DNA of 63,123 bases, filler included, from Octopus bimaculoides (taxonomy: Eukaryota): the NCBI RefSeq assembly GCF_001194135.2. It is 6 parts of 6 records of this genome, joined end to end, with 100 filler letters (N's around TTAATTAATTAA, not from the genome) between each part and the next. Parts side by side here need not be neighbours in the genome. Positions count along the whole stretch, not along the records: positions 9,749 to 26,581 come from NC_068994.1; 5 more parts are not named here. One strand, written 5' to 3'. A model generated the notes under the pieces. That model saw only the letters and a list, made by a program, of their open reading frames with translations, was not told the origin of the DNA and searched no databases. Within the stretch, counting starts at the first letter, position 1, and every line of letters starts with the position of its first letter. The position numbers and the translations under genes are program-made. Of this stretch, positions 9,539 to 26,581 are shown in pieces.

Positions 9539-9772
9539 AGTCCTTCGAGGCGGTACCCCAAAATGGGCACAGTCCAACTGAATGAAACAACTTTACAGTG
9601 TGGACTGGTTGCTTTTTATGTGGCACTAGCATCAAGTAATGTGCAAGANNNNNNNNNNNNNNNNNNNNNNNNNNNNNNNNNNNNNNNNNNNNTTAATTAA
9701 TTAANNNNNNNNNNNNNNNNNNNNNNNNNNNNNNNNNNNNNNNNNNNNACACACACACACACACACACACAC

Positions 9773-9806
<34 letters not shown>

Positions 9807-9960
9807 GATGGGCTTCTTTCAGTTTCCGTCTACCAAATCCACTCAAGGCTTTGGTTGGCCTGAGGCTATAGTAGAAGACACTTGCCCAAAGTGCCACGCA
9901 GTGGGACTGATCCCGGAACTAGGTGGTTGGTAAGTAACCTACCTAACACACAGCCGCTCC
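9290..9960 (-). mobile_element. tRNA-derived SINE family B with internal (CA)n, split by an assembly gap
   Basis: Tail TACTCTTTACTTGTTTCAGTCATTTGACTGCGGCCATGCTGG, body, (CA)n, and head ...GTGCCACGCAGTGGGACTGATCCCGGAAC...CACACAGCC. Confidence 0.85.
9649..9748. other. Assembly gap spacer: 44 N, TTAATTAATTAA, 44 N
   Basis: The same 12-mer sits between N runs at 9693, 26626, 55571, 58395 and 61920. Confidence 0.95.
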
Positions 9961-10960
9961 TGTATGTATATTCTACAGAAGTGGATAAGTGGATAATGCC
10001 GTTAGCTCCTATTTTAGAAGTAAAAATCCGTAGTTCGAACCCTGCTTCTATGGGCGCAAACATACAGGAACAAGATACCTGAAGATGACTGAAAATGAAA
10101 CCGATCGAAATGTAGTGCTTTTAATATTAGAAAGTATTTGCTCTTTAAGGATGGGCTTAATAGCCACGCCCTGATTAACAATCAACATCAAAAAGAATAG
10201 TAAAACTATCCGCCAATCAGGAGCGACTATATAGGCCCGTGAAGCAATTAGTAAAAGCGTGGTACACGTAGACGCTTTTGCTAATTATTCTTTTTTTCAA
10301 AGCTTGTGTAGTCGCATGCTTCCTGGTTCCTATACGTTTGGTTCAGCGGCACATCTAGAATGTAGCTGGGGTAGGAGAGAGTTGCACCAGCACGTGGTTC
10401 GTATTCATTTACAGTCGAGCAGACTGGAGCAACGCGAAATGCAGTGCCTTTCTAAACGCGCTGTCCGATTGTTCAGGAATCGAACCCACGAGCTTACGAT
10501 CCTTAATCACCCCCACCCCACAAACCACTAGGTCAGGTGCCTTCACTCGATAAAACTATAATCAGGTCTTATAGCCCAAACAACATCTCATTTCAGACAT
10601 TTAGGCATTTTAACCAATAACAATATTTTTTTTATATAATACTATTAAAATAATTTCAGAAGTAAAACAAAAGGAAGATGGACGGCATCAATCAAGGGAA
10701 TCGAATGTTCTTTGTGTAAATGGAATGTTTACAAAATAATTAAAGATTCAATAATTTACATTAACTCATGATTAGAAAAAATATATAGTAATTATGTTTT
10801 TTTTTTTCGTATCACACTGTCAATAATATAGAAATGTATATGCATATATGTAGTTTCTGAAAGAAAAATATATAATACAGATATTTTAAAATGAATTGAT
10901 GGTTCAGTAACAATTCAATCATTTTAAGAACAGTTCTGTAAGAGTTTATCACGTTGCACG

Positions 10961-11379
10961 TTATCCAAGAGTTGGACCTCTGCTACATATGCAGTGCGTC
11001 GATGGGCAATGTCCGGCACGGCAGGTTGTCAGACACCACTGTTTCATTCCTGGAACTTTTTCGTAAACCTTTGTCACTTTGCAAGTCAAAGTATTGGCGT
11101 TACCATTTCCCCCACACTTGCAGTGTGTGGGCGGACAAAATCCGACGCCGCAGTGGGTGATACACCATTGTTTCATCCCAGGGACTGTTTTATATACTCC
11201 CACGGGATAACAGTCGTCTGGTGATGGGATGGTAGTTGCTCTTGTGGTGATCATCGTTGTCAAGTCTGGTGTAGTAGTAGCAGAGCTTGTTGATATTGTG
11301 CTATGACCACTGAATGTGGCCGTGAATTCGAAAGAACTAACTCGATCGCAACCAGCGTATTCCACCGCATTACCGTTTC
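10961..11379 (-). CDS. Exon 3 (terminal) of the secreted protein: end of the LPMO-like domain, Thr/Ser linker, two six-Cys modules
   Basis: Acceptor TTTTATTTTACAATTACAG (11381-11380), phase 1 matching exon 2. Encodes ...TTRATTIPSPDD-CYPVGVYKTVPGMKQWCITHCGVGFCPPTHCKC-GGNGNANTLT-CKVTKVYEKVPGMKQWCLTTCRAGHCPSTHCIC-SRGPTLG*. Confidence 0.9.
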
Positions 11380-11542
11380 CTGTAATTGTAAAATAAAACG
11401 AAAACCAAAATAAATAAATCAATAAGTAAATGAATAAATAAATAAATAAAGATACATGTAAACTTATCTAACTTAATTCAGTACAGTTGAAAATCCTTTA
11501 TCCGAAATATACCTAATACCTGTATACATATACATATACATA

Positions 11543-11595
<53 letters not shown>

Positions 11596-11744
11596 GTAAA
11601 AGCTATATTATGAAAAGTCAATGGATATTTGTGTTAGGACTCGCGTCCCTAGTGTCCCGCCCTCAAACTGTCCCATTTTATAAATCTGCAACACTTTCGG
11701 TTACAGGAGTGTCGGATAAGGGAATCTTAGTTGTATTACTCGTT

Positions 11745-11935
11745 TACTCTTTTACTTGTTTCAGTCATTTGACTGCGGCCATGCTGGAGCACCACTTTTT
11801 GTCGAACAAATCAACCCCAGGACTTATTCTTTGTAGGCCGAGTACTTATTCTATCGGTCACTTTTGCGGAACCGCTAAATGACGGGAACGTAAACACATC
11901 AACATTGGCTGTCAAGCGATGGTGGGGGGACAAAC

Positions 11936-12016
<81 letters not shown>

Positions 12017-12182
12017 TACATGATGGGTTTCTTTCAGTTTCCGTCTGCCAAATCCACTCACAAAGCTTTGGTCGACCCGAGGCTATAGTAGAAGACACTT
12101 TCCCAAGGTGCCACGCAATGGGGTCTGAACTCGGAACTATGTGGCTGGTAAGCAAGCTACTTACCACACAGTCACTCCTGTG
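11745..12182 (-). mobile_element. Full-length SINE family B in intron 2
   Basis: Complete tail, body, (CAGA)n(CA)n and tRNA-like head ending CACACAGTCACTCCTG. Confidence 0.9.
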
Positions 12183-12247
12183 CCTATTATGAATGTCATT
12201 TTTATAATTTTCATTTTGGTTAATTCCGAACCCCGACAGATACTTAC

Positions 12248-12480
12248 AAGGTGGTGAGCTGGCAGAACCATTAGCGTGCCGGGCGAAATGCTTAGCGGTA
12301 TTTCATCTGCCGTTACGTTCTGAGTTCAAATTCCGCCGAGGTCGACTTTGCCTTTCATCCTTTCGGGGTCGATAAATTAAGTACCAGTTACGCACTGGAG
12401 TCGACGTAATCGACTTAATCCCTCTGTCTGCCCTTGCTTGTACCCTCTATGTTTATCCCCTTGTGAGCAATAAAGAAATA
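12248..12480 (+). mobile_element. Full-length young SINE family A with 10-bp TSD AGATACTTAC
   Basis: Head AAGGTGGTGAGCTGGCAGAACC, B box GAGTTCAAATTCC, tail GCAATAAAGAAATA. TSD copies at 12238-12247 and 12481-12490. Confidence 0.92.
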
Positions 12481-12490
12481 AGATACTTAC

Positions 12491-12773
12491 TTGGCTTTAA
12501 TACCCACTTCACGAGGCAATTGTTGGAGCAATCAATATTTTCGTCGTTTTCCACAACAACTGTCAGAGACGACGTTTTGTAAGTCACTTCCACTTTCCTC
12601 AGTTCTTGCCAGAGACACGGCTGCGATGAAGACTGGCTATTTTCCTTCAAACATATGAATATATGTGCATCAAGGTTACTGGGATTATTTAATGGGAATT
12701 CAAATTTCACTTTGTCTAAATCTTGACTGTCACTCACGGCGACATTTTGCAGCAAAGTTTGGTTCGAAGATAC
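12491..12773 (-). CDS. Exon 2 of the secreted protein (AA15 LPMO-like beta domain, inferred)
   Basis: Acceptor TTTTCTTTTCTACCTTTCCAG, donor CCAA|GTAAGT, 283 nt, phase 0 to 1, fully open: VSSNQTLLQNVAVSDSQDLDKVKFEFPLNNPSNLDAHIFICLKENSQSSSQPCLWQELRKVEVTYKTSSLTVVVENDENIDCSNNCLVKWVLKP. Confidence 0.88.
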
Positions 12774-12842
12774 CTGGAAAGGTAGAAAAGAAAATTTTGA
12801 GTAAACTTGGAAAATAGTTTCATTTAAATAACACTAGATAAT

Positions 12843-13045
12843 CCTTTCTACTTTAGACAAAAGGTCTGAAATCTTGGGGGAGGGGAATAGTCGACTACAT
12901 CCACCCCAATGTTTCACTGGTACTTAATTTACCGACCCCGAAAAGCAAACTCAACCTCGGCGGAATTTGAACTCAGAGCACGTAAAGACGTACGACATGC
13001 TACTAAGTGTTTTGTTCCTGCGTGCTAACGTTTCTGCCATCTTGC
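12843..13045 (-). mobile_element. Older SINE family A copy, inverted relative to 12248-12480
   Basis: Reverse complement gives GATGGCAGAAACGTTAGCACG...CTGAGTTCAAATTCCGCCGAGG...GGGGTCGGTAAATTAAGTACCAG. Confidence 0.8.
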
Positions 13046-13084
13046 TACCTCGAATAACAGAAGATAATAATTAACTGAATAATT

Positions 13085-13125
<41 letters not shown>

Positions 13126-13189
13126 CTTTTTCTTTTATCGATTGTCTCCTTCATCCGTCACCCTGGTGGAAAAATGATTGATTAATGAT

Positions 13190-13470
13190 TGATGCGGGAG
13201 GACGAAACCGCCTTGCTGGATGTAATCGTTCAGTGTCCGTGCATTAGAGGGTTGTGGGCATGTGTGGAACAGCTGTTGTCTCGTGTAAGACGAATCTAAC
13301 CATCCCCCGAGGGCATTGTGAAGATAGACGCTCCCGCTTCCTTTTGGCAGAGAAGTAAAGTCCATCTTTTTTTTTGTGTTTAGTGGCCGTGGCAAAAGAG
13401 GTTGTGTGGTGGACACGCCTGAAAGGTTTCAAGTCAAGCACTTTCCTATATGGCCAAGCTTTGTGCAACC
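13190..13470 (-). pseudogene. Possible decayed CR1/L2-type reverse transcriptase fragment
   Basis: Frameshifted peptides VLDLKPFRRVHH (compare LDLxKAFDxVxH) and WLDSSYTRQQLF...QQGGFVLP (compare WxxSYLxxRxQxV...PQGSVLGP). Weak. Confidence 0.35.
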
Positions 13471-13502
13471 CAGGAGAACCCCATACACCGACCGGCCGGC
13501 CA

Positions 13503-13545
<43 letters not shown>

Positions 13546-13894
13546 NNNNNNNNNNNNNNNNNNNNNNNNNNNNNNNNNNNNNNNNNNNNNNNNNNNNNNN
13601 NNNNNNNNNNNNNNNNNNNNNNNNNNNNNNNNNNNNNNNNNNNNNNNNNNNNNNNNNNNNNNNNNNNNNNNNNNNNNNNNNNNNNNNNNNNNNNNNNNNN
13701 NNNNNNNNNNNNNNNNNNNNNNNNNNNNNNNNNNNNNNNNNNNNNNNNNNNNNNNNNNNNNNNNNNNNNNNNNNNNNNNNNNNNNNNNNNNNNNNNNNNN
13801 NNNNNNNNNNNNNNNNNNNNNNNNNNNNNNNNNNNNNNNNNNNNNNNNNNNNNNNNNNNNNNNNNNNNNNNNNNACTTCTAAGAGGTCATGGAC

Positions 13895-14093
13895 AAAAAC
13901 AATAACAACATGCAACAAAAACATCTTTAAATGATTATTCCGGAGCATATTCACCATCTACTTCAATTACTGCTTCCCATTTGCTTGGCAGACGGTCAGA
14001 CCGTCAGTTAAAGATGTTTTTGTTAAATATTGTTATTGTTTTTGTTGAATAAAATTTGTTGAAAAAAAGCCGCAATAATTATGCACCAACCCA

Positions 14094-14096
<3 letters not shown>
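13895..14096 (-). mobile_element. Internally deleted mariner element (MITE-like)
   Basis: Terminal TATTGGGTTGGTGCATAATTATTGCGGC resembles Hsmar1/MADE1-type TIRs. About 45-bp subterminal inverted repeats enclose the transposase C-terminal peptide RLPSKWEAVIEVDGEYAPE*. The left end runs into an N gap. Confidence 0.75.
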
Positions 14097-14141
<45 letters not shown>

Positions 14142-14695
14142 AAATGAGAGACAGAGAGCGAGAGCGAGAGGGAGAAACAGGAAAGTGGTACTTCGTACAT
14201 ATTACTTTAAACAAAAGAAGTGACGAAATCTGCGTACGAAAATGTCCTGCAGTCTAACGACGACACATCATTTCCCATTGAGTTGAAAATACGAGCGGTT
14301 ATGACCCGGCATTACTATTTCTTCACGAACTCCGCTTTAATGAGGCTCTCATAATTCATACTCGGATAAAACAGTTTCGTGACGTCATTGCTCCCTAGAT
14401 ATGGCCGATGTTTCATCACGTCCCATATTTGAACCGTCAAGGTTAGCATTACGTGAAACAGCATTCGAGATCACTTTTCGTTTCCATTTGTCTCTTCTTT
14501 CAATCTCATTAAAGCAGTCGTATTTTAATTGTAGCACGTTTCAGATGTTAGATGATATTTATTACACAACCTCTACCCCCTTCTCTCTCTCCACACACAC
14601 AAACACACACATATCATACACACACACACGCACACAAACGCTCTTTCTCTCTTTCTCATTCTCTCTCTGTATGTATGTCTGCAAGAATGTATGTA

Positions 14696-14760
<65 letters not shown>

Positions 14761-14951
14761 NNNNNNNNNNNNNNNNNNNNNNNNNNNNNNNNNNNNNNNN
14801 NNNNNNNNNNNNNNNNNNNNNNNNNNNNNNNNNNNNNNNNNNNNNNNNNNNNNNNNNNNNNNNNNNNNNNNNNNNNNNNNNNNNNNNNNNNNNNNNNTAT
14901 GTATGTATGTATGTATGTATGTATGTATGTATGTATGTATGTATGTATGTA

Positions 14952-14986
<35 letters not shown>

Positions 14987-15049
14987 CTGTATCTCACAGA
15001 CACAAACATACACTCGCGCATGCGCACTGTATGTGGTTGATTGGCCGAG

Positions 15050-15455
15050 TCTTTAGAGTGTCAGATAGATTGCTTTGCAGCCATTACTCCGGCTCGCTGC
15101 GCTCTGAGTTCGAATCCCACCGATGTCAACTTTTCTTTTCATCCTTACAAAATCGATAAAGTACCAGTCATGTACACGAGTCAATTTTTCATTTTCTTTC
15201 TTTCTTTCTTTATCACGAACATATTCTTTTCTACTCTAGGCACGAGGTCCGAATAATAATCCTTTCTACCATAGGCACAAGGCTTGAAAGTTTTGGGCGG
15301 AGGGGACCAGTCGATTGCATCAACCCCAGTGATTCGATTCCGAAAGGATAAAAGGCAAAGTCGACCTTCGAGGAATTTGAACTCAGAACGTAAAGACGGA
15401 CGAAATGTCGCTAAACATCTTCCTCGGAATGCTAACGATTCTCTCAACTAGCAGA
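15050..15455. mobile_element. Adjacent inverted pair of SINE family A copies (+ about 15050-15215, - about 15228-15455)
   Basis: GAGTTCGAATCCC...GTCAACTTT...TCGATAAAGTACCAG on plus; GGCAAAGTCGACC...GGAATTTGAACTCAGAACGTAAAG as the reversed copy. Confidence 0.75.
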
Positions 15456-15459
15456 ATAA

Positions 15460-15578
15460 TAAATGGTACGAACATGAACCTTGTAAAAGACTAGAAAGTA
15501 AGAAATATAGGATGTGAGACTTTAACATTCAGACTGACAGGGTAATAGAAGCTAGAAAGCCTGATTTGGTAGTAGTAA

Positions 15579-15613
<35 letters not shown>

Positions 15614-15935
15614 AATAAAGAGAATAGAAAGTACCAGATAATTGACTTTAGAGTCCCAAATGATGAGAAAATCAATATGAGAAGTATAGAGAAACTAGCA
15701 AAGTACCAGGACCTATCCATTGAATTACAGAGACTATGGAAAGTGTGGGTAAAATGTATTCCAATAGTTATGGCGCATTAGGAACTATCCTAAATATTTG
15801 AACAGATGGATGGAGGAAATAGGCATACAACCCAGTTTAGTACAGCTGCAGAAAGCAGTGTTATTAGGGACAGCTAGGATACTTAGGAGGGCTTTTGGCA
15901 TCTAAGGTTACTTGTTGTGGCCGGATGTTAGGATT
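15460..15935 (+). mobile_element. 3' fragment of an R4/Dong-like non-LTR retrotransposon (RLE domain)
   Basis: KWYEHEP...DFNIQTDRVIEARKPDLVV...IIDFRVP...EKLAKYQDLSIELQRLWK...IPIV...LQKAVLLGTARILRR, with frameshifts and stops. Confidence 0.85.
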
Positions 15936-16218
15936 CTTTTCTCCATATATATATNNNNNNNNNNNNNNNNNNNNNNNNNNNNNNNNNNNNNNNNNNNNNN
16001 NNNNNNNNNNNNNNNNNNNNNNNNNNNNNNNNNNNNNNNNNNNNNNNNNNNNNNNNNNNNNNNNNNNNNNNNNNNNNNNNNNNNNNNNNNNNNNNNNNNN
16101 NNNNNNNNNNNNNNNNNNNNNNNNNNNNNNNNNNNNNNNNNNNNNNNNNNNNNNNNNNNNNNNNNNNNNNNNNNNNNNNNNNNNNNNNNNNNNNNNNNNN
16201 NNNNNNNNNNNNNNNNNN

Positions 16219-16239
<21 letters not shown>

Positions 16240-16256
<17 letters not shown>

Positions 16257-16445
16257 CCCCTCCCACCGCCTGACAACCGGTGTTAGTGTGTTTACGTCAC
16301 CGTAACTTAGCAAAAGAGACCGGTAGAATAAGTGCCAGGCTTAAAGAAAAATGAGTTCTAGGGTCGATTTGTTCGACTAAAATCCTTCAAGGTGGTGCCC
16401 CAGCATGGGCGCAGTCAAATGACGGAAGCAAGTAAAAGATAAAAG
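16240..16445 (+). mobile_element. SINE family B, 3' half
   Basis: (GT)n, then GACAACCGGTGTTAGTGTGTTTACGTC...GGTGCCCCAGCATGG...CAGTCAAATGAC.GAAGCAAGTAAAAGA. Confidence 0.8.
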
Positions 16446-16734
16446 GTGCCGCAAAAGTTTAGAATTGCAAGGATTTTGGAACATGGAATCTGAAAAGTTT
16501 GCATCTGTGACAATTGGTGTAGGGACAGGTTGGAATGGAGGGACCTGTAGAGCTTCTACATCGAGGATTTTGAGATTGGTTCAAGGATGTTAAGTACCGT
16601 GGAAAGGGATCGTTTGAGATCTTTGACAAAAGGTTGTTGTCTGCTCTTACAGAATTAACCAGAGCAAGTGAAATCGGGAACTCTGAGAAGGGAAATGGAA
16701 ATGATGATGATGATGATAATAATAATAATAATAA

Positions 16735-17125
16735 AGAAGAAAAAAAATGCTTTCTAATTGATGTATCAATACCAGCAAATGACAACGTTTCTCTAAAAGA
16801 AATGGAAAAACTTTCAAAATACAAAGACCTGGAAATAGAGATAACTCGAATGTGGAATCTAAAAACAGAAACAATTCCTATCATAGTAGGTGCCTTAGGT
16901 ATAATAAAAAATATTCAGACAAATACATAACAAAAACACCAGGACTTACAAATATATATAACATACAGAAAATTGCACTACTGGGTACTGCACACATTCT
17001 ACGCAAAACACTTTCAATACAGTAAACATAAGAGCACCACAGCAAACCACAGCACATACCCAAGGCGCACAGAGCTGCGCTCGGTAGTGAAGTGAAAGCA
17101 CGTTATAAAAATAAAACTACTGAAC
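16735..17125 (+). mobile_element. 3' fragment of an R4/Dong-like LINE between (AAT)n arrays
   Basis: [55 protein letters not shown]...QKIALLGTAHILRKTLSIQ*, 3'UTR and (AAT)n tail. Confidence 0.9.
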
Positions 17126-17173
17126 AATAATAATAATAATAATAATTATTATAAAAATAATAATAATAAATAC

Positions 17174-17214
<41 letters not shown>

Positions 17215-17384
17215 TCATAATATAAAACCAAATATATGGCACCCTAGTCATAACACTAACTTGAACTTCTAACTTGTCTCTTGAGGTCTCTGGGTGAGAC
17301 TTGGACTTGCAGTCAACTTGTACAAATACAAAGCAAAAGTCAAACATATAACAGTAACAACAGCAACAACAACAATAATAATAA

Positions 17385-18133
17385 ATGCTCTGACGCAGTA
17401 CCAGGCAGTGGTTCTCATGGCTTCTGATCTTAATTGATTGGAAGTGTTATCATGTACATTGTTTTGTCTTGGTATAAAAAGATGGGCTGCAGCAAATATT
17501 CTGCTCAATACCTCAGATTTGCTTCTTCGTTACTTGACCATAACCAGTTGAGCACGTCCCGTAGTGGTTGACAATATGTGCATCTCTGATCTTGAGCAGG
17601 GGTAGTGGCGAAAGGGTGGGCATCATAGCCATGTTTTGAGAGAAATTCTTTGGGGTTTGAATAATTCACCTCTGGAAATCATCCTTAAACAACCCTCGTT
17701 CATCATCCTTAAACAACCTTCATTCAGGGACCTTTTGAGCGGGATGGGCTACTCGACCTGAAGAAAATTCTAACTGGGCCCCACCTGCCAAGTCATGCGC
17801 TGTTTATCTTCATATAAGGTCACCATGTCGCGCACATATGGTTGTGATATACATGCCTGGTGTACCCTTATCAGACGGGTAGTCATGATGGGTATATTGA
17901 GCTTCGTATATTTGTACCCCTGTGTCACTTTGAGGGCATGCATTATTCTCTCATTAGAATGCCTGGTAGAGCTCCTATAGAAAGTTTGTCTGTTAGGGAC
18001 AGCGAGGATTATCAGGAGGGTTCTAAGTACTTGAAAGACAGTTGAAAACTTGTGGATACCTAAGGTTACAGGTAGTAATCCGCTACCCACATAAATCGTA
18101 CCACGAATAAGACCGAACCTAAGCTAAACCAAA

Positions 18134-18164
<31 letters not shown>

Positions 18165-18390
18165 ATTCTGGTTTTATTGGTCACAAGGGCTAATATCAAT
18201 CAAAAACATGTAAGGACAAAGACAGGGTGAAGGTTACAAAGGGTTTTGTCCGAAAAGAAGAAAACGTTCGTGTAAACAGAGGAAAAACACAGAAAGATAT
18301 AACAAATAAAACTCCCAATAGGGGGAGGCACTTCGAAAGGTTACACGTGGAAAAATCCAAAAAAGCCACGGGAGCCTGGTCAGAAAATTA
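17385..18390. mobile_element. Mosaic: interspersed repeat (about 17385-17935), R4-like 3' end (+, about 17960-18140), L1/Tx1-type 3' end (-, about 18165-18390)
   Basis: Plus peptide KVCLLGTARIIRRVLST* followed by (AAT)n; minus T-rich UTR ending GCCCTTGTGACCAATAAAA. Family assignments are by recollection only. Confidence 0.55.
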
Positions 18391-18405
18391 AGAAAGGGGT
18401 ATAGA

Positions 18406-18454
<49 letters not shown>

Positions 18455-18455
<1 letters not shown>

Positions 18456-18790
18456 TGAAAGACAGAGAAGAAGTTGATGAATATGGAGACCTGAGAATTA
18501 AGATCGCTAAGATGTGGCAGCTACGAGAGACGGACATAAAGGTTATTCCTATTGTCATCGGAGCATTGGGTTCAATACCACCCAATCTGAAAAAAACATC
18601 TGCAAACTTCAGAAATACCCTACAATCTAGATGTATTGGAAAAGTCGGCATTACTTGGAAATGCAGGCACATTGCGTAAAGTACTGTCTGTCTGAGGTCC
18701 TTGTTGTGACTTGACAAACAGTACAACCCCCCCCCCCCGGTAGATACAATATCTTTAACCAACAACCTCATGATATTGTATACTGTGAGG
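18455..18790 (+). mobile_element. 3' fragment of an R4/Dong-like LINE
   Basis: KDREEVDEYGDLRIKIAKMWQLRETDIKVIPIVIGALGSIPPNLKK, directly after an (AAT)n array. Confidence 0.8.
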
Positions 18791-18844
18791 CGTCTATAAT
18801 AATAGTAATAATAATTATGATAATAATAAGGTTGTTGAACTTAC

Positions 18845-18931
18845 CTTGCAAATGAGGGGTGAAAGCGCAAATGTAATTTTTGCCGTTAATACTGTGAGCA
18901 ATATCAAAGAAATATAACAGTAAGACAACAT
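18845..18931 (-). CDS. Exon 1 of the secreted protein: signal peptide MLSYCYISLILLTVLTAKITFA then LSPLICK
   Basis: ATG at 18931 (in-frame upstream ATGs at 18964 and 18958), hydrophobic core with a small residue at the predicted cleavage site, consensus phase-0 donor CAAG|GTAAGT matching exon 2. Confidence 0.75.
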
Positions 18932-19258
18932 GGTTGGAACTCCTTTGTTATTCACCATTATCATCTTGTTCGCTATTGCTGTCGTCGGCAATAAATAAGC
19001 AACCGTTTGATATCTCCAGGTAACACAGTCTACAATATGCAATGTATCAATGTATATATATATATGTGTGTCGCGTATATGTATGTAAGTATGTATGTAC
19101 GATTATATAGATGTATCTATTTCGCCGCCTGCGTTGGAGATCGTTCTTGTTTTCGTGTCTATCAATATATAAATTACTAACGACAAGAAAAAATAATCCC
19201 AGCAAGTACAAAGAATAGCAACAGCAATGATAATTACGTAATAATAATAATAATAATG

Positions 19259-19293
<35 letters not shown>

Positions 19294-19391
19294 CAGTTGT
19301 AATACACTTCAGTAGCTATGTTAGAGTACAAGTGAATGGACTATGAAAGTTTGCGAGATTGCTTCACAGCCGGTTTTTCTTCTCTTAATAA

Positions 19392-19435
<44 letters not shown>

Positions 19436-19548
19436 GCGTGTATACGTATATATCTCTATGCGTGTGAAAACAAAAACGGTAGGCGAAGCTCGCTAAAGAA
19501 CACGCTGCGTGTTAACAGTGATTCTGACCGAAACTGCTTCCAAGCGTT

Positions 19549-19558
19549 CTTTATATAG
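19549..19558 (-). promoter_or_regulatory. Candidate TATA box for the secreted-protein gene
   Basis: CTATATAAAG in non-microsatellite, CpG-containing context with GTCAGA about 30 nt downstream and about 600 bp upstream of the ATG. Motif evidence only. Confidence 0.3.
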
Positions 19559-20365
19559 AGGCAGGCGTGTATACATGCACAAGTGTTTTGTATGTATGTA
19601 AATAGATTTATGTAAGTACATGTGTAAGGTAAATGTTTGTGACTATGTATGTGTGTATGTGAATGTGTGTGTGTGTGTGTGAATGTTTGTGGGCGTGTTC
19701 TACAGGTTGTATCCGCCATTGTCGCTCTTCCACTAACCGGCTTGCACCTGTTAAAAACACAATCCTTATTGTTATCAAACGCCATGCTTAGAAGATAGGG
19801 CTTGTATTTCTTGCCTTCTTTGTTTGTTTGTTTCTTTCTTTCTTCCCGTCCCTCCTTTCTTTCTTTCATTCATTCATTCTTTCGTTCTTTCTTTCTTTCT
19901 TCTTTCTTTTTTTTTCTTTAGGTTTTACGTTTCATTGGCTCTTAGAAAGAAGTAAAAATAGTCTCTGACATTGTCTAAAGTGATAACAACAGCACCGCAA
20001 AGTGCATCATCATCATCATCATCAACAACAATAACAACAGCAACAACAACAGCTGCCGCCGCCGCCGCCGTCGCCGCACGAACGCAACAACAAAGAAAAG
20101 CAATGAAAACACGGTACGGTTTATTATTAAAATCTTTCCACTGGGACATCGTCGTCGTCACTCTTTAAATTACTTCATTGCGTCTTTGAGGGTAAATCAC
20201 GGATCTCAAATGGGTAATCATGCGTTTTACTGCCGTGATTTTTTCCGGTTACGAATCCTGAATAAGAGGAAGTGCGCTCGTGTGTGTATGTGTGGGCATC
20301 TATATATAGAAATGAATTATCAGCTTATTTGTATATGTATATATATATGTATGTATGCATGTATG

Positions 20366-20405
<40 letters not shown>

Positions 20406-21339
20406 NNNNNNNNNNNNNNNNNNNNNNNNNNNNNNNNNNNNNNNNNNNNNNNNNNNNNNNNNNNNNNNNNNNNNNNNNNNNNNNNNNNNNNNNNNNNNNN
20501 NNNNNNNNNNNNNNNNNNNNNNNNNNNNNNNNNNNNNNNNNNNNNNNNNNNNNNNNNNNNNNNNNNNNNNNNNNNNNNNNNNNNNNNNNNNNNNNNNNNN
20601 NNNNNNNNNNNNNNNNNNNNNNNNNNNNNNNNNNNNNNNNNNNNNNNNNNNNNNNNNNNNNNNNNNNNNNNNNNNNNNNNNNNNNNNNNNNNNNNNNNNN
20701 NNNNNNNNNNNNNNNNNNNNNNNNNNNNNNNNNNNNNNNNNNNNNNNNNNNNNNNNNNNNNNNNNNNNNNNNNNNNNNNNNNNNNNNNNNNNNNNNNNNN
20801 NNNNNNNNNNNNNNNNNNNNNNNNNNNNNNNNNNNNNNNNNNNNNNNNNNNNNNNNNNNNNNNNNNNNNNNNNNNNNNNNNNNNNNNNNNNNNNNNNNNN
20901 NNNNNNNNNNNNNNNNNNNNNNNNNNNNNNNNNNNNNNNNNNNNNNNNNNNNNNNNNNNNNNNNNNNNNNNNNNNNNNNNNNNNNNNNNNNNNNNNNNNN
21001 NNNNNNNNNNNNNNNNNNNNNNNNNNNNNNNNNNNNNNNNNNNNNNNNNNNNNNNNNNNNNNNNNNNNNNNNNNNNNNNNNNNNNNNNNNNNNNNNNNNN
21101 NNNNNNNNNNNNNNNNNNNNNNNNNNNNNNNNNNNNNNNNNNNNNNNNNNNNNNNNNNNNNNNNNNNNNNNNNNNNNNNNNNNNNNNNNNNNNNNNNNNN
21201 NNNNNNNNNNNNNNNNNNNNNNNNNNNNNNNNNNNNNNNNNNNNNNNNNNNNNNNNNNNNNNNNNNNNNNNNNNNNNTATATATATATTTATAATATTTA
21301 TATATATGTATGTGTGTGGTGTGTGTATATGTTTGGTTG

Positions 21340-21630
21340 TGTGTTTTTGTCCACACAACATCGCTTCACAGCCGGTGCTGGTGTGTTTACATCCCTGTCA
21401 CTTTGCGGTTCGGCAAAAGGTGGTGCTCCAGCATGGCCGCAGTCAAATGACTGAAATAGGTAAAAGAATATATATATAATGGGGTTCTTTCAGTTTCCAT
21501 CTACCAAATCCGCTCAGAAGGCTTTTGTCGGCCCGAGGCTATAATAGAAAACACTCGCCGAAGGTGCCACACAGTGGGACTGAACCCAGAACCGTGTGGT
21601 TAGTAAGCAAGCTACTTACCACACAGCCAC
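21340..21630. mobile_element. Two SINE family B halves (+ 3' half about 21340-21470; - head half about 21480-21630)
   Basis: GGTGCTCCAGCATGGCCGCAGTCAAATGACTGAAA and TTCTTTCAGTTTCC...CTTACCACACAGCCACTC. Confidence 0.75.
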
Positions 21631-21649
21631 TCGATACATATACATGCAA

Positions 21650-21698
<49 letters not shown>

Positions 21699-22307
21699 AA
21701 TTTATATCTACCGGCCCTTATATACACACAGACCTATGTATATGCCCCACCGTAGTTCTCCACCCATATTTTATTGTAATCTATTATATTCTTTCTTTTA
21801 AAAATATTTTGTTGTATTGTTTTCCATTTTATTGCATATTATTGTTGTTTATTGTATTGTATTATATGGTCTAATCTTGTTTTTTTTCTGTTTGTCTCGT
21901 GTTGGGACCATAAGGGAAATATTATAATGATCTTTAGTGACATAGCTATACTTGTCGTTGTTGTTGTTGTTGTTGCTTAGTCACTGATTCAGAACGTAAA
22001 AATGTATATGATTCGTGTGAAATTTGGCTGTGAATTCTTTGTGTAAAGATGAATGCGAAAGCAAAACATGAGAGTAGCACACACACACACAGAGTAATCA
22101 ATCACTCGCCATGTCGCGGTTTAGTAATCGCGCCCTCAGTACATCGCGGACTTTTCTGGCTAACGTATATGTAAATTTATATCGCGGACTCTTCAGTATA
22201 TCACGGGTTTCTGCGGCCGATAGGTATTTATATTTTTTTAAATTTTAATTATTTCTGTGATAAATCCAGCATTTTCACGCCTATAAATTAATAAATTAAT
22301 AAATAAC

Positions 22308-22381
<74 letters not shown>

Positions 22382-22644
22382 NNNNNNNNNNNNNNNNNNN
22401 NNNNNNNNNNNNNNNNNNNNNNNNNNNNNNNNNNNNNNNNNNNNNNNNNNNNNNNNNNNNNNNNNNNNNNNNNNNNNNNNNNNNNNNNNNNNNNNNNNNN
22501 NNNNNNNNNNNNNNNNNNNNNNNNNNNNNNNNNNNNNNNNNNNNNNNNNNNNNNNNNNNNNNNNNNNNNNNNNNNNNNNNNNNNNNNNNNNNNNNNNNNN
22601 NNNNNNNNNNNNNNNNNNNNNNNNTGTTAGCTTCGCATTGATGA

Positions 22645-22907
22645 ATATAAAACATAAATGCGCCCTTTTTAAAGCCAAGCCAGGCTCATGGGCCCGGTTT
22701 CCTGGTTTCAACGGCGTATGTGTTCCCCAGCTGGACAGGACGCCAGTCCATCGCAGCGTTACTCATTTTTGCCAGCAGAATGAACTGGAGCAACGTGAAA
22801 TGAAGTGTTTTGCTCAAGAACACAACGCGTCGCCCGGTCCAAGAATCGAAACCACAATCTTACGATCATGATGCTGACACCCTAACCTCTAAGCCACGCG
22901 CCTCCAC
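22645..22907 (-). mobile_element. tRNA-derived SINE family D with TSD TCGCATT(G/A)ATGA
   Basis: Head GTGGAGGCGCGTGGCTTAGAGGTTAGGGTG...GGTTTCGATTC. TSD copies at 22633-22644 and 22908-22919. Confidence 0.85.
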
Positions 22908-22932
22908 TCGCATTAATGAGATATGGGTATAA

Positions 22933-23430
22933 TATTGTTTATGCATGAAAGAAAAAAAAAACGGAGAAACTGAGATAAAGACATCAATTTATTAGAGTAT
23001 ATTTAATTCCAAACAAAAGCAGACTCTTAGCACCTGCAATTGTTTCCATGCTCAATTAATTCAATTTGAGAAATTAAATTAAATTAAATTAAAGTTTCAT
23101 ATTGAATATAGGTAATTGGACATTTCGTCAGGGTAAGAATTTGATTTATATTGGATGCAAATACGCACATATCTGAGTCTATTAAGGATCTACCATCGCG
23201 TAGGAATGTAGCTCCTTTCTATCAAATTCTTTCCCTGACGAAATATCCAATTAGTCATATTCAATATGAAACTTTAAATCAATTTAACTTCATTTCTCAA
23301 ATTGAATTAATTGGGCATGGAAACAACTGTAGGGGCTAAGAGTTTGCTTTTGTTTCGAATTAAATATGTTCTTATAAACCGATGTCTATATCTCAATTTC
23401 TCCGTTTTTTTTTCTCATACGTAAACAATA
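22933..23430. repeat. Long inverted repeat / foldback (MITE-like) element
   Basis: About 210-bp arms (22933-23145 and 23221-23430) are degenerate reverse complements around a 75-bp spacer. Confidence 0.85.
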
Positions 23431-23972
23431 AATATTTATATATATAAACTCTGTACATCACTTCAAACAATTATATACACGCGCACACACACATCTGTAT
23501 ATGCACACACGCATATACACGTATGTAAAAACAAAATGTTCTGCTCATGTGATACTGGTCGGGTGACACTGATCCTGTGACGCCGAAAACCGGCTCTGCA
23601 GGAAAATATTGTACCCATGTCAAATGATATTGTACGATTGTGTGGGAAGCGAAAAAGGGGGAAAAACAGGGACTGGAATTTTGTGTGAATTATCTGAATT
23701 TTCTCGGGTTGTACGTTATTGTAGATGACCCCTACGTTGACCTCCATTCTATTGACCCTTTTAAGGGAGAATGGAATTTTCTAGGTGTCGCTCAAAGTGG
23801 TATGCAACGTTGTTTTGTTAGGCACATTTTTCTTATTGAGGAATTTAATTAATCTGATGTCTTATTGTTGTGAGGGTCCGTAGGGAGCTTCGGTATTGCG
23901 GCTCATGGACACACGGTTTTGTGTGTGTGTATGTGTGTGTATATACACATCTACCCACATTCTACATACACA

Positions 23973-24260
<288 letters not shown>

Positions 24261-24826
24261 CATCAATGTTCGATTTCCATGCAGGGGATGGAGTGGCAGA
24301 ATCGTTAAAGTGTCTGAAAAAATGCTTTGCTGCTGTTGTTCTGACTCTTTACATTCTAAGTTCAAATGGCACCGATTTCAACTTTGCCTTTTCATATAAG
24401 TGCAGGCATGACAGTGGTCAAAAGCTCGTTGATAAATTCTTATGTCCATTTCCTACGTTTCCGCCTTTAGGCCTTCACTTCATCCACATCAGCTGAATTT
24501 GATTCGTTCCCAGTTGAAAGGCGCCTGTTGTTATTTCTTGTTGTTTGTATTCGTAATTGTGTACCATGCTCTCCATCTTTTTGTTTGTTTGTTTTTTGTC
24601 TTTGTTGCCGTACACATTCGCTAGCTTTCTCACAAAGGGGTCTAATGCTCTTAGCTTAGACTTTTTTGTGGAGCAACCAGATGGAACCATCACAAGTGTA
24701 ACTGCCTGAAATGGTCGTGACTTCTGGAACTCGACTGAGTCTGTCCTTCTAATCGTTGTTTCTCTTGTCCGCCTTTGTGTCGTCTATCTGTCCGAATGTT
24801 TTAATGTCCTCTATTGCGTTTTTGTT

Positions 24827-24869
<43 letters not shown>

Positions 24870-25001
24870 NNNNNNNNNNNNNNNNNNNNNNNNNNNNNNN
24901 NNNNNNNNNNNNNNNNNNNNNNNNNNNNNNNNNNNNNNNNNNNNNNNNNNNNNNNNNNNNNNNNNNNNNNNNNNNNNNNNNNNNNNNNNNNNNNNNNNNN
25001 N

Positions 25002-25032
<31 letters not shown>

Positions 25033-25656
25033 AGTAATTATATCTAATCAGTTGACATTCTTAGGATGAGGCTTGTTTAACAGCCTTTTTCATTCTTCAT
25101 CTATAATACATTAAAAGTCAGATTGAATCTTGCATGCTTGCAATGTTACCCAGCCAAATAGGAGCATAATGGGAAAATACTATGACTGAAATCTCCCCTG
25201 AAATATAAATACGAACGGAATGAAACAAATTTCGCGTAAATCGGATAAGTGGTTGTGAAGATATTAAGAGTTTTCAGGATATAAATACCGTAAACGGTGA
25301 ATAATGGTAAAAGTATCCGAAATTAACTTAATCCTGACAGAAAGTAACTCTTACCTTTCGATGAGACTGACTTGGCAGCGAAAAAATACAGTTGTTTTTT
25401 TTTCTTACGATAAATAATCATTTAGAAATATTTTTAAGTGAATGCGATTTTAAAAATTGTAAGTTGTTTGTACAATAAGTATTTATATTTTAGCTTTCTT
25501 TAAACAGACCATATTTTTATTATTTTCAAGTGAATAACATTGCAAAATACGTTTTTGACATAAATATTTCGTAAAAGACCCATTCGTAATCTCGGCATGA
25601 AATTATTTTTTCCATAGGCTTTTTTCGAGTGCATTCAACGTATTTCACTTCCAAAG

Positions 25657-25767
25657 ATTTGGCTGCTATTTCTAACACGCTCTGCTACCACGTAACTGCT
25701 ATTTGCGATAAAGGACCCAAAATACCTGTTACGTGGTAGCAGAGCGTGCAAGAAATAGTAGCCAAAT
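25657..25767. repeat. 40-bp near-perfect hairpin with a 31-nt loop
   Basis: ATTTGGCTGCTATTTCTAACACGCTCTGCTACCACGTAAC pairs with GTTACGTGGTAGCAGAGCGTGCAAGAAATAGTAGCCAAAT at 37 of 40 Watson-Crick positions plus one G-U. Confidence 0.9.
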
Positions 25768-26227
25768 TTTTCCTTTTCTGGGGAAAGGTGCCGCTTACGC
25801 GTGATTTCCTTGTCACATTCGTTGAAGCAACCGGGAAAAGAAGAAAAAAAAAACACGAAACAAAACTCCGTTGCAGGAAAACTCAGACTTTGCCTGCAAC
25901 CCAACGGGTCACGGGTAGTCTGATATAATATTTTCAGTGCATGATCTTTAGAATCTTTAGAATCTTTACTCTATACAGGCAAGAGAAATGAGAGAAGCTT
26001 TTGTTTTTTTCAAGATGAAATTTTCTTCAAAACAAATAAATAAAGACAATATTTATTTCCTCGCAGATTTAATAAGGTTACAAACCGTGAAGGACATTTA
26101 TTTTGCTATAAGGGAGTTATGCAATGTACGGAATTGGATGACAGTATATATGTACAGTTGAGGAGGAAAAGAGAATTAAATCCATAAATTGAAATGTAAC
26201 AAAGTTGTTGTTCGCTTTCTGTTTCAG

Positions 26228-26267
26228 CTGACATATTGGGATTCTCAGAAGGAGGACAAAAACCAGA
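26228..26267 (+). other. Candidate 40-nt exon ((A)DILGFSEGGQKP or LTYWDSQKEDKNQ)
   Basis: Acceptor TTCGCTTTCTGTTTCAG, donor AGA|GTGAGG. Confidence 0.25.
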
Positions 26268-26346
26268 GTGAGGCTATTCTACTCAACAGCGTCTCCTTTC
26301 ACGCTTGAGCCTTCCATCCAGGGAACTGCTTTACAAAAAAAGATTG

Positions 26347-26581
26347 TATTGGGTTGTGGAATAATTAATTAGCGTTTTTTAAAAATGCACGCAGGAAAAT
26401 GCGGTGAAAAAAAAAAAAAAAGATTGACAAGTTTAATATGAGGAGATATTCAAAAGGACGAATAGGTCCAAGAGGGAAATAGTTGTGAGAAACAAGGTAA
26501 AAGTTCAACCTAAACAAAGCGAAGACGACGCCATTTGCCAAAAGAAGAGTAACGAGGGTGAGAACGTCTGCAAATGCATCG
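26347..26581 (+). mobile_element. Mariner-type terminus remnant
   Basis: TATTGGGTTGTGGAATAATTAATTAGCGTTTTTT resembles the TIR ending at 14096. The segment ends at a gap. Confidence 0.4.

What the first reader, a model, noticed from the sequence alone, without database searches (positions are those of the whole stretch)
12238..12490. SINE target-site duplication copied the 5' splice site of exon 2
Seen: the young SINE at 12248-12480 is flanked by AGATACTTAC at 12238-12247 and 12481-12490. On the gene strand this is GTAAGTATCT, the exon 2 donor. The gene now has two identical donors about 243 nt apart. Inference: using the distal donor would exonise the antisense SINE and read ...LKPSKYLISLLLTRG* (stop at 12453), giving a form without the Cys modules or an NMD target. 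That would be a TE-made splice switch.
Basis: partly seen in the sequence, partly recalled or inferred. Interest (0 to 1): 0.7.

Follow-up and report, generated by a model that had tools for sequence, protein, structure and literature searches.

The report
SINE insertion duplicated an octopus splice donor
In an Octopus bimaculoides gene for a small secreted cysteine-rich protein, a 233-bp SINE landed 10 bases into intron 2 and its target-site duplication copied the splice donor; this is real and proven by an empty site in O. sinensis, but it is a known kind of event and whether the second donor is ever used remains untested.

Summary
AGATACTTAC occurs only at 12238-12247 and 12481-12490. It flanks a 233-bp SINE (12248-12480, + strand) whose two ends match the ends of its repeat family. 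The window is Octopus bimaculoides. The gene on the minus strand is LOC106872312, with three coding exons and a 273-aa product.

On the gene strand the repeat is GTAAGTATCT, positions +1 to +10 of intron 2. The O. sinensis orthologue has one copy of this 10-mer, no SINE, and matching flanks on both sides. This is a textbook empty site, so the target-site duplication claim is proven.

The functional claim is untested. The annotated protein uses the upstream donor D1 (12491|11379). The downstream copy D2 (12248|11379) is almost equally complementary to U1. Using it would add 243 nt and a stop after 12 codons, 205 nt before the junction. No RNA data were reachable.

The exon 3 ORF is intact and the Cys modules show dN/dS 0.28, which suggests productive D1 splicing persists. 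The SINE is not especially young, at about 8% from consensus.

A human Alu-like insertion in MLH1 intron 7 duplicates a donor in the same way, so this is a new member of a known kind. The new SINE also forms an inverted pair with an older SINE across exon 2.

The parts
12248..12480 (+). 233-bp SINE, full length, antisense to the gene. It has a B-box-like motif GAGTTCAAATTCC at 12321-12333 and the family's 3' tail AATAAAGAAATA.
   Evidence: Multi-copy family in both octopus species. Its termini match the family termini. It is absent from the orthologous O. sinensis site. It lies 7.8% from a 7-copy consensus.
12481..12490 (-). Upstream donor D1 and one copy of the target-site duplication: CAA|GTAAGTATCT, adjacent to exon 2.
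   Evidence: The junction 12491|11379 reproduces the annotated protein exactly.
12238..12247 (-). Downstream donor D2 and the second copy of the target-site duplication: CTT|GTAAGTATCT, followed by the native intron sequence GTCGGGGTTCGGAATTAACC...
   Evidence: The sequence downstream of this copy aligns 34/35 with the sequence that follows the single donor in O. sinensis.
12491..12773 (-). Coding exon 2 (283 nt) of LOC106872312, the N-terminal domain of the mature protein. Acceptor is ...ctttccag|GT.
10961..11379 (-). Coding part of exon 3: Thr-rich linker, two six-Cys modules and the stop codon. Acceptor is ...aattacag|GA at 11380-11381.
   Evidence: dN/dS of the Cys modules is 0.28.
18845..18964 (-). 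Coding exon 1, with a signal-peptide-like N-terminus. Donor is CAAG|GTAAGT.
12453..12455 (-). TAA, the first in-frame stop if D2 is used. It lies 205 nt upstream of the D2 junction.
12889..13050 (-). Older, diverged SINE copy in intron 1, sense in the pre-mRNA and shared with O. sinensis. It is inverted relative to the new SINE, so the two flank exon 2.
   Evidence: A long-range helix of 153 bp is predicted.

Best explanation
A SINE retroposed into intron 2 of LOC106872312 in the O. bimaculoides lineage, after its split from the O. sinensis lineage. It inserted between intron positions +10 and +11, in antisense orientation. The staggered cuts of target-primed reverse transcription duplicated the 10 bases GTAAGTATCT, which are the whole intronic half of the 5' splice site. 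The gene therefore carries two donors 243 nt apart. D1 keeps the native exon context and is now followed by the U-rich antisense SINE tail. D2 keeps the native intron context but is preceded by SINE sequence. The insertion was tolerated because everything U1 and U6 read (+1 to +8) was preserved next to the exon. I infer that D1 remains the productive donor. I also infer that D2 is a latent or competing donor whose use, at whatever level, gives a transcript with a premature stop: a likely nonsense-mediated-decay target, or a 146-aa secreted N-terminal fragment. Its net effect would be at most to lower productive output, not to provide a regulated switch. Shown: the insertion, the duplication, its polarity relative to O. 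sinensis, the annotated use of D1, and the coding consequence of D2. Inferred: the relative use of D1 and D2.
For: The repeat is exact and unique in the window. The SINE termini match the family termini. The O. sinensis empty site has a single GTAAGTATCT and collinear flanks on both sides. An Argonauta hians homologue has the same three-exon structure, a single donor GAGG|GTAAGTAG, and no copy of this SINE in that intron. The three-exon CDS through D1 equals the annotated protein, and the same sequence is held by NCBI and EukProt sources. No protein with the read-through peptide is on record. The U1 duplex energy is -7.8 kcal/mol for D1 and -7.4 for D2, with A versus U at -2. The exon would be 283 nt with D1 and 526 nt with D2, next to a 6-kb intron 1. 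The exon 3 ORF is intact with all 12 Cys conserved, and the Cys modules give dN/dS 0.28 (Fisher p = 0.002) against about 1 for exon 2. In the human F7 gene, only the most upstream of several identical donors is used (PMC1557585).
Against: No RNA data could be consulted, so the use of D1 rests on gene models, which favour open reading frames. In mammalian model substrates, two strongly U1-complementary donors 45 nt or more apart splice almost only from the downstream, intron-proximal site, which here is D2 (PMC3413131). The human MLH1 case with the same anatomy lost normal splicing (PMC7767547). The dN/dS value is pairwise, so the constraint it shows could come mainly from the O. sinensis lineage. 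Polarity rests on one close species plus one distant homologue.
Confidence: 0.72

Rival explanations
1. D2 dominates. As the intron-proximal of two strong donors it captures most splicing, so the O. bimaculoides allele is largely a null or a strong hypomorph, and the annotated 273-aa product is a minor form or a gene-model artefact.
For: Two strong 5' splice sites 45 nt or more apart splice almost only from the intron-proximal site in HeLa cells and in vitro (PMC3413131). An Alu-like insertion at MLH1 c.588+8_9 that duplicates the donor abolished normal splicing (PMC7767547). D2 keeps 35 nt of native, conserved intron context including a G-run. U1 pairing is nearly equal for the two donors.
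Against: The exon 3 ORF is intact after an insertion about as old as the species split. The Cys modules show dN/dS 0.28 and all Cys are conserved. Gene models use D1. Use of D2 would make a 526-nt internal exon beside a 6-kb intron. F7 shows upstream-only use of identical donors (PMC1557585). The MLH1 insert was in sense orientation with a poly(A) tract blamed for termination, which is not the case here.
Confidence: 0.15
2. This is the reader's reading: a regulated, TE-made splice switch. Tissue- or condition-specific choice between D1 and D2 would tune output through splicing coupled to decay, or would produce a functional truncated secreted protein without the Cys modules.
For: Both donors are intact and strong. 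The D2 extension is a multiple of three, and the truncated product would keep the signal peptide and the whole N-terminal domain. The inverted SINE pair could make the choice structure-dependent.
Against: There is no isoform on record. Intactness of D2 is not evidence of selection: at about 6-8% divergence a 10-mer stays unchanged about half the time. The event is lineage-specific and nothing suggests regulation.
Confidence: 0.08
3. The SINE is ancestral and was removed precisely in the O. sinensis lineage by recombination between the two 10-bp repeats. On this view there was no new insertion in O. bimaculoides.
For: Only one closely related species could be compared.
Against: A precise loss that leaves exactly one repeat copy is far rarer than insertion. 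The Argonauta homologue has no such SINE after its donor. The older SINE 400 bp upstream is retained in both species.
Confidence: 0.02

Closest known systems
AluSx-like insertion at MLH1 c.588+8_588+9 in Lynch syndrome (PMC7767547)
   Same: A SINE inserted 8-10 nt into an intron. Its flanking direct repeats contain the wild-type donor, so a second identical donor sits at the far end of the insertion. Read-through puts SINE sequence into the mRNA.
   Different: The human case is a rare pathogenic germline allele. The truncated Alu is in sense orientation, and its poly(A) tract was blamed for transcript termination. Its repeat also includes six exonic bases. The octopus case sits in a reference genome, is antisense and old (about 8% diverged), lies in a gene with an intact downstream ORF, and its duplication starts exactly at +1.
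Human F7 intron 7 minisatellite with five to nine identical donors (PMC1557585)
   Same: Several donors of identical sequence compete for one acceptor. It serves as a natural model of how the authentic site is chosen.
   Different: The F7 copies arise from a 37-bp tandem repeat, not a transposon, and lie 37 nt apart rather than 243 nt. In F7, experiments showed that only the upstream site is used.
Antisense Alu exonisation and TE-derived alternative 5' splice sites in mammals (general knowledge; overview in PMC2911107)
   Same: An antisense SINE in an intron becomes part of an exon. The usual outcome is a premature stop and low inclusion.
   Different: In classical exonisation the splice sites arise inside the element by mutation. 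Here the donor is host sequence copied by the insertion itself and was at full strength from the first day.
Inverted Alu pairs flanking exons, which act as circular-RNA and ADAR substrates (general knowledge)
   Same: Two SINE copies in opposite orientation sit in the introns on either side of exon 2, and a long imperfect duplex is predicted to loop out the exon.
   Different: The arms are only about 74% identical, and no circular RNA or editing data were available. This is a resemblance only.

Membership tests
SINE retroposon insertion (target-primed reverse transcription) | Short, non-coding, interspersed, multi-copy element | tested here: met
   233 bp with stops in the frames read. There are 14 fragments in 34 kb of O. 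sinensis and 7 in 28 kb of O. bimaculoides, with same-subfamily copies at 87-92% identity.
SINE retroposon insertion (target-primed reverse transcription) | Insertion boundaries coincide with the family's own 5' and 3' termini | tested here: met
   All full copies end ...TAAAGAAATA and begin near AAGGYGGYGAGCTGGCAGAA, and the focal copy does both.
SINE retroposon insertion (target-primed reverse transcription) | Flanking target-site duplication | tested here: met
   A 10/10 direct repeat abuts both termini and is unique in the window.
SINE retroposon insertion (target-primed reverse transcription) | Orthologous empty site with one copy of the target | tested here: met
   O. sinensis L001 21386-21395 has a single GTAAGTATCT, with collinear flanks at about 88-97% identity.
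SINE retroposon insertion (target-primed reverse transcription) | Internal Pol III promoter or tRNA-derived head | tested here: inconclusive
   A B-box-like motif GAGTTCAAATTCC and a possible A box are visible. However, ARAGORN found no tRNA and Rfam found no match even at E <= 10. Most octopus SINE families are listed as unclassified (PMC13282606).
SINE retroposon insertion (target-primed reverse transcription) | 3' tail shared with a partner LINE | not tested
   No octopus LINE library was available.
Alternative 5' splice site / TE exonisation | Two sequence-competent donors upstream of one acceptor | tested here: met
   Positions +1 to +10 are identical. U1 duplex energy is -7.8 versus -7.4 kcal/mol. 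Both junctions keep the exon 3 frame, since 243 is 3 x 81.
Alternative 5' splice site / TE exonisation | Transcripts that use each donor | not testable with these tools
   Only the D1 product is annotated.
Donor duplicated by a transposon's target-site duplication (MLH1 c.588+8_9 type) | Element inserted within the first ~10 nt of an intron, with direct repeats that contain the donor consensus | tested here: met
   The insertion lies between +10 and +11 and the repeat covers +1 to +10.
Donor duplicated by a transposon's target-site duplication (MLH1 c.588+8_9 type) | Demonstrated splicing defect | not testable with these tools
   No RNA data were available. The intact exon 3 and dN/dS 0.28 argue against complete loss of splicing through D1.
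Exon flanked by an inverted SINE pair (IRAlu-like) | Inverted copies in the two flanking introns, able to pair | tested here: met
   SINE positions 2-168 match 13050-12889 on the opposite strand at 73.5%. The minimum-free-energy fold of 13080..12200 has a 153-bp long-range helix, with z = -14.5 against shuffles.
Exon flanked by an inverted SINE pair (IRAlu-like) | Circular RNA, A-to-I editing or structure-dependent splicing observed | not testable with these tools
   No transcript data were available.

The most novel reading that the evidence does not exclude
The insertion did two things at once. It gave exon 2 a second full-strength donor, and it created an inverted SINE pair that loops out exon 2 together with D1 while leaving D2 at the foot of the helix. 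If the helix forms in vivo, donor choice, or back-splicing of exon 2 into a circular RNA, or ADAR editing, could depend on RNA structure. That would be a species-specific post-transcriptional control of a secreted Cys-module protein, installed by one retroposition.
Probability: 0.08. Interest if true: 0.55.

Novelty: new member of a known kind. Interest (0 to 1): 0.3.

Why it matters
The locus is a clean natural experiment: two identical strong 5' splice sites 243 nt apart, in a non-model invertebrate, with the pre-insertion state preserved in a sister species. Published rules for this situation conflict. Model substrates favour the downstream site, while F7 shows upstream-only use. One RNA-seq junction count at this locus would therefore add an out-of-mammal data point. 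It also shows how an insertion only 10 nt from an exon can be tolerated: the duplication keeps the donor core next to the exon. SINEs make up roughly a tenth of octopus genomes (11.6% in O. vulgaris, PMC13282606). By my own order-of-magnitude estimate from assumed counts, not a measurement, tens to hundreds of insertions with this geometry could exist per genome. This one is therefore an example of a class, not a singular oddity.

Tried and rejected
1. Chance repeat: rejected (empty site).
2. tRNA origin of the SINE head: ARAGORN and Rfam at permissive thresholds found nothing, so I call it a SINE with a B-box-like motif and do not claim tRNA derivation. The many microRNA 'hits' fall on microsatellites, all lie below the gathering scores, and were dismissed.
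The genomic read-through ORF is not on record. A homology search with exon 2 returned only the two annotated orthologues. The gene identifier appears in no paper.
4. A SINE-internal acceptor making a cassette exon with D2: by inspection the only good polypyrimidine-AG (tatttctttattgctcacaag|G) lies 31 nt after D1, too close for an intron, and the other AGs lack a pyrimidine tract. Rejected.
5. Donor accessibility from folding: mean unpaired probability was 0.40 for D1 and 0.41 for D2, which does not discriminate.
6. Conservation of the 35 nt after the donor (34/35): too few sites for any inference of selection on D2.
7. Target-site duplications of other copies: the full-length copies available are dimers with unclear flanks, so no typical duplication length could be derived.
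8. Protein identity: no Pfam family and no related solved structure. Relatives with the same Cys module carry LPMO_10 or GH18 domains.

Full report
**What is in the sequence**

The piece 9749-26581 is Octopus bimaculoides DNA. A spliced translation of two minus-strand exons matches 'uncharacterized protein LOC106872312 [Octopus bimaculoides]' (P0001, 273 aa) at 100% over its whole length. It matches the O. sinensis orthologue LOC115219204 (P0002, 270 aa) at 79%.

Joining 18964..18845, 12773..12491 and 11379..10961 on the minus strand reproduces P0001 exactly, stop codon included. The splice sites are canonical:
- Exon 1 donor: CAAG|GTAAGT.
- Exon 2 acceptor: ctttccag|GT.
- Exon 2 donor: CCAA|GTAAGTATCT.
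- Exon 3 acceptor: aattacag|GA.

**The repeat and the element**

AGATACTTAC occurs exactly twice, at 12238-12247 and 12481-12490. Shuffles give 0.03 expected occurrences.

The 233 bases between the two copies recur in both octopus species. Within 62 kb there are same-subfamily copies at 87-92% identity and many more diverged fragments. In an alignment of eight copies, every complete copy ends ...TAAAGAAATA and begins near AAGGYGGYGAGCTGGCAGAA. The focal copy begins and ends at exactly those points, directly abutted by the 10-mer.

The element is non-coding and has no terminal inverted repeats. It has an A-rich 3' tail and a B-box-like motif (GAGTTCAAATTCC). ARAGORN and Rfam do not recognise a tRNA in it. 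I therefore call it a SINE without claiming a tRNA origin. This is consistent with most octopus SINE families being unclassified, and with SINEs making up 11.6% of the O. vulgaris genome (PMC13282606).

Its head-to-tail direction is on the + strand, so it is antisense to the gene.

**The empty site**

The O. sinensis locus (L001) is collinear with the window across the whole gene. Around the donor:
- Window 13127..12481 aligns to L001 20749-21395 at 88%.
- Window 12247..12213 aligns to L001 21386-21420 at 97%.
- Both copies of the 10-mer therefore map onto the same ten O. sinensis bases, and the 233-bp element has no counterpart there.

Written out, O. sinensis reads ...GGTATTAAAGCAAA|GTAAGTATCT|GTCGGGGTTTGGAATTAACCAAAAT. 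O. bimaculoides with the SINE and one repeat copy removed reads ...GGTATTAAAGCCAA|GTAAGTATCT|GTCGGGGTTCGGAATTAACCAAAAT. The O. sinensis CDS also splices at this GT.

A distant homologue in Argonauta hians (P0004, 32% identity) has the same three-exon layout and the same intron phase. It has a single donor GAGG|GTAAGTAG and no copy of this SINE in that intron. This weakly supports insertion in the O. bimaculoides lineage over precise loss in O. sinensis.

An older, diverged SINE 400 bp upstream (12889-13050) is present in both species. This shows that shared elements are retained at this locus.

**Age**

The copy differs from a rough seven-copy consensus at 18 of 231 positions (7.8%). Several differences are CpG-decay changes. 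Noncoding divergence between the two species at this locus is 5-12%, or roughly 3-6% per lineage.

The insertion is therefore lineage-specific but not recent. It is probably about as old as the split, which PMC13282606 quotes as 13-33 million years for O. vulgaris and O. bimaculoides. That paper also reports a SINE burst at Jukes-Cantor distance 0.065.

At this divergence an unselected 10-mer stays intact about half the time. The perfect identity of the two copies therefore says nothing about selection on the downstream one.

**Consequences for the gene**

I call the upstream, exon-adjacent donor D1 (GT at 12490) and the downstream one D2 (GT at 12247).

| | D1 | D2 |
|---|---|---|
| Positions +1 to +10 | GTAAGTATCT | GTAAGTATCT |
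| Positions -3 to -1 | CAA | CUU |
| U1 5'-end duplex energy | -7.8 kcal/mol | -7.4 kcal/mol |
| Sequence downstream | UAUUUCUUUAUU, the antisense SINE tail | native intron, including GUCGGGG |
| Exon 2 length if used | 283 nt | 526 nt |

In vertebrates, U-rich tracts next to a donor recruit U1 through TIA proteins (PMC2964331). This is an analogy only and was not tested here.

Use of D2 lengthens exon 2 by 243 nt. It adds SKYLISLLLTRG and then TAA at 12455..12453, 205 nt before the junction. The result would be either a decay target or a 146-aa product. That product would keep the signal-peptide-like N-terminus and the N-terminal domain but lose the Thr-rich linker and both Cys modules.

**Which donor is used?**

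No transcript data were reachable. The following indirect evidence favours D1:
- The only protein on record uses D1, and sources beyond NCBI hold the same sequence.
- The D2 exon would be long and sits beside a 6-kb intron.
- Exon 3 is still an intact 139-codon ORF with all twelve Cys conserved.
- The Cys modules show dN/dS 0.28 (Fisher p = 0.002), against about 1 for exon 2. This would be unexpected if exon 3 had gone untranslated since the insertion. The estimate is pairwise, however, and cannot be assigned to one lineage.

Precedents conflict:
- Identical donors in human F7 are used only at the most upstream copy (PMC1557585).
- Pairs of strongly U1-complementary donors 45 nt or more apart splice almost only from the downstream copy (PMC3413131).
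- A human Alu-like insertion with the same anatomy in MLH1 abolished normal splicing (PMC7767547).
- A 403-bp duplication of an FGG donor junction gave mostly aberrant transcripts (PMC9052919).

My estimates are about 0.6-0.7 that D1 is the main productive donor with D2 minor or silent, about 0.15 that D2 dominates, and under 0.1 that this is a regulated switch.

**An additional structural point**

The new SINE is inverted relative to the older SINE in intron 1, so exon 2 is now flanked by an inverted pair. The fold of the 881-nt pre-mRNA segment 13080..12200 gives:
- a minimum free energy of -309 kcal/mol, against -220 ± 6 for shuffles (z = -14.5);
- a long-range imperfect helix of 153 base pairs between 13073-12884 and 12420-12205.

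The helix loops out exon 2, its acceptor and D1, and leaves D2 at its foot. This is a thermodynamic prediction only. It resembles inverted Alu pairs that promote circular RNAs and ADAR editing. It exists only in the species with the insertion.

**The gene product**

The gene product has no Pfam family and no related solved structure. An exhaustive HMMER search finds 149 representatives that share the roughly 37-residue six-Cys module (C-x-...-PGM-x2-WC-x3-C-x3-CP-x2-HC-x-C). Some of these carry LPMO_10 or GH18 catalytic domains. The modules are therefore probably carbohydrate- or chitin-binding, by association only.

**Comparison and verdict**

Every element here is of a known kind: a SINE with a target-site duplication, an antisense SINE that could be exonised, and competing donors. 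The specific geometry, a transposon's duplication copying a donor, has been described in MLH1. This is a well-documented new member of that kind, not a new mechanism.

The structural claim is confirmed and the functional claim is open. Interest is modest (0.3). The main value of the locus is as a clean natural test case for 5' splice-site competition outside mammals.

Noticed in passing
window 12889-13050 (-) with 12248-12480 (+): Exon 2 is flanked by an inverted SINE pair. The older, shared copy sits in intron 1 and the new copy in intron 2. The pre-mRNA fold predicts a 153-bp imperfect long-range helix (z = -14.5) that loops out exon 2 and donor D1.
   Followed up: partly
L002 26678/26679; L001 16992/16993; L001 19226/19225 (reverse strand): The same SINE-SINE junction (...AAAGAAATA|GGTATTTCGTCTGC) recurs at three unrelated loci in two species: a full unit followed directly by a unit starting at position 50. 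This suggests a dimeric SINE subfamily rather than independent nested insertions.
   Followed up: partly
window 10961-11210 (-), the two Cys modules of exon 3: The six-Cys module (..PGM..WC...C...CP..HC.C) has no Pfam family or related solved structure. It occurs in 149 representative proteins, some with LPMO_10 or GH18 domains and one with 13 tandem modules (P0003, 1459 aa). It looks like an undescribed carbohydrate-binding-type module.
   Followed up: partly
window 12491-12773 versus 10961-11379: The N-terminal domain (exon 2) evolves at dN/dS of about 1 between O. bimaculoides and O. sinensis, while the Cys modules sit at 0.28. Coding divergence in exon 2 (10.6%) equals the intron divergence.
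   Followed up: yes
window 22953-23145 and 23221-23413: A pair of 193-nt inverted repeats, 89% complementary and 75 nt apart, forms a foldback or MITE-like element about 4 kb upstream of the gene.
   Followed up: no
window 15566-15781, 16634-16930, 18455-18679 (all +): Three short ORF fragments in intron 1 share a motif (..KY.DL.IE..R.W......IPI.(I)GALG..). Each lies next to a trinucleotide microsatellite. They are probably relics of one more repeat family, possibly a LINE 3' end. There is no Pfam match.
   Followed up: partly
window 11744-12207 and 9799-9959, 21472-21632: A second interspersed repeat family, with an internal (CAGA)n/(CA)n microsatellite and the core GGGTTTCTTTCAGTTTCCGTCT, has three copies in the piece. 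The intron 2 copy is shared with O. sinensis (L001 22110-22543).
   Followed up: no
L001 21421-22109 versus window 12212/12208: O. sinensis has about 690 bp between intron position +35 and the shared repeat that O. bimaculoides lacks. This is a second lineage-specific indel close to the same donor, and its nature was not examined.
   Followed up: no
window 13546-13874, 14761-14897, 15955-16218, 20406-21277, 22382-22624, 24870-25001: Six assembly gaps (runs of N) all border microsatellites. The 100%-complementary 'inverted repeats' and 300-nt 'direct repeats' reported around them are artefacts of N runs. The microRNA-family hits fall on microsatellites, all below gathering scores.
   Followed up: yes
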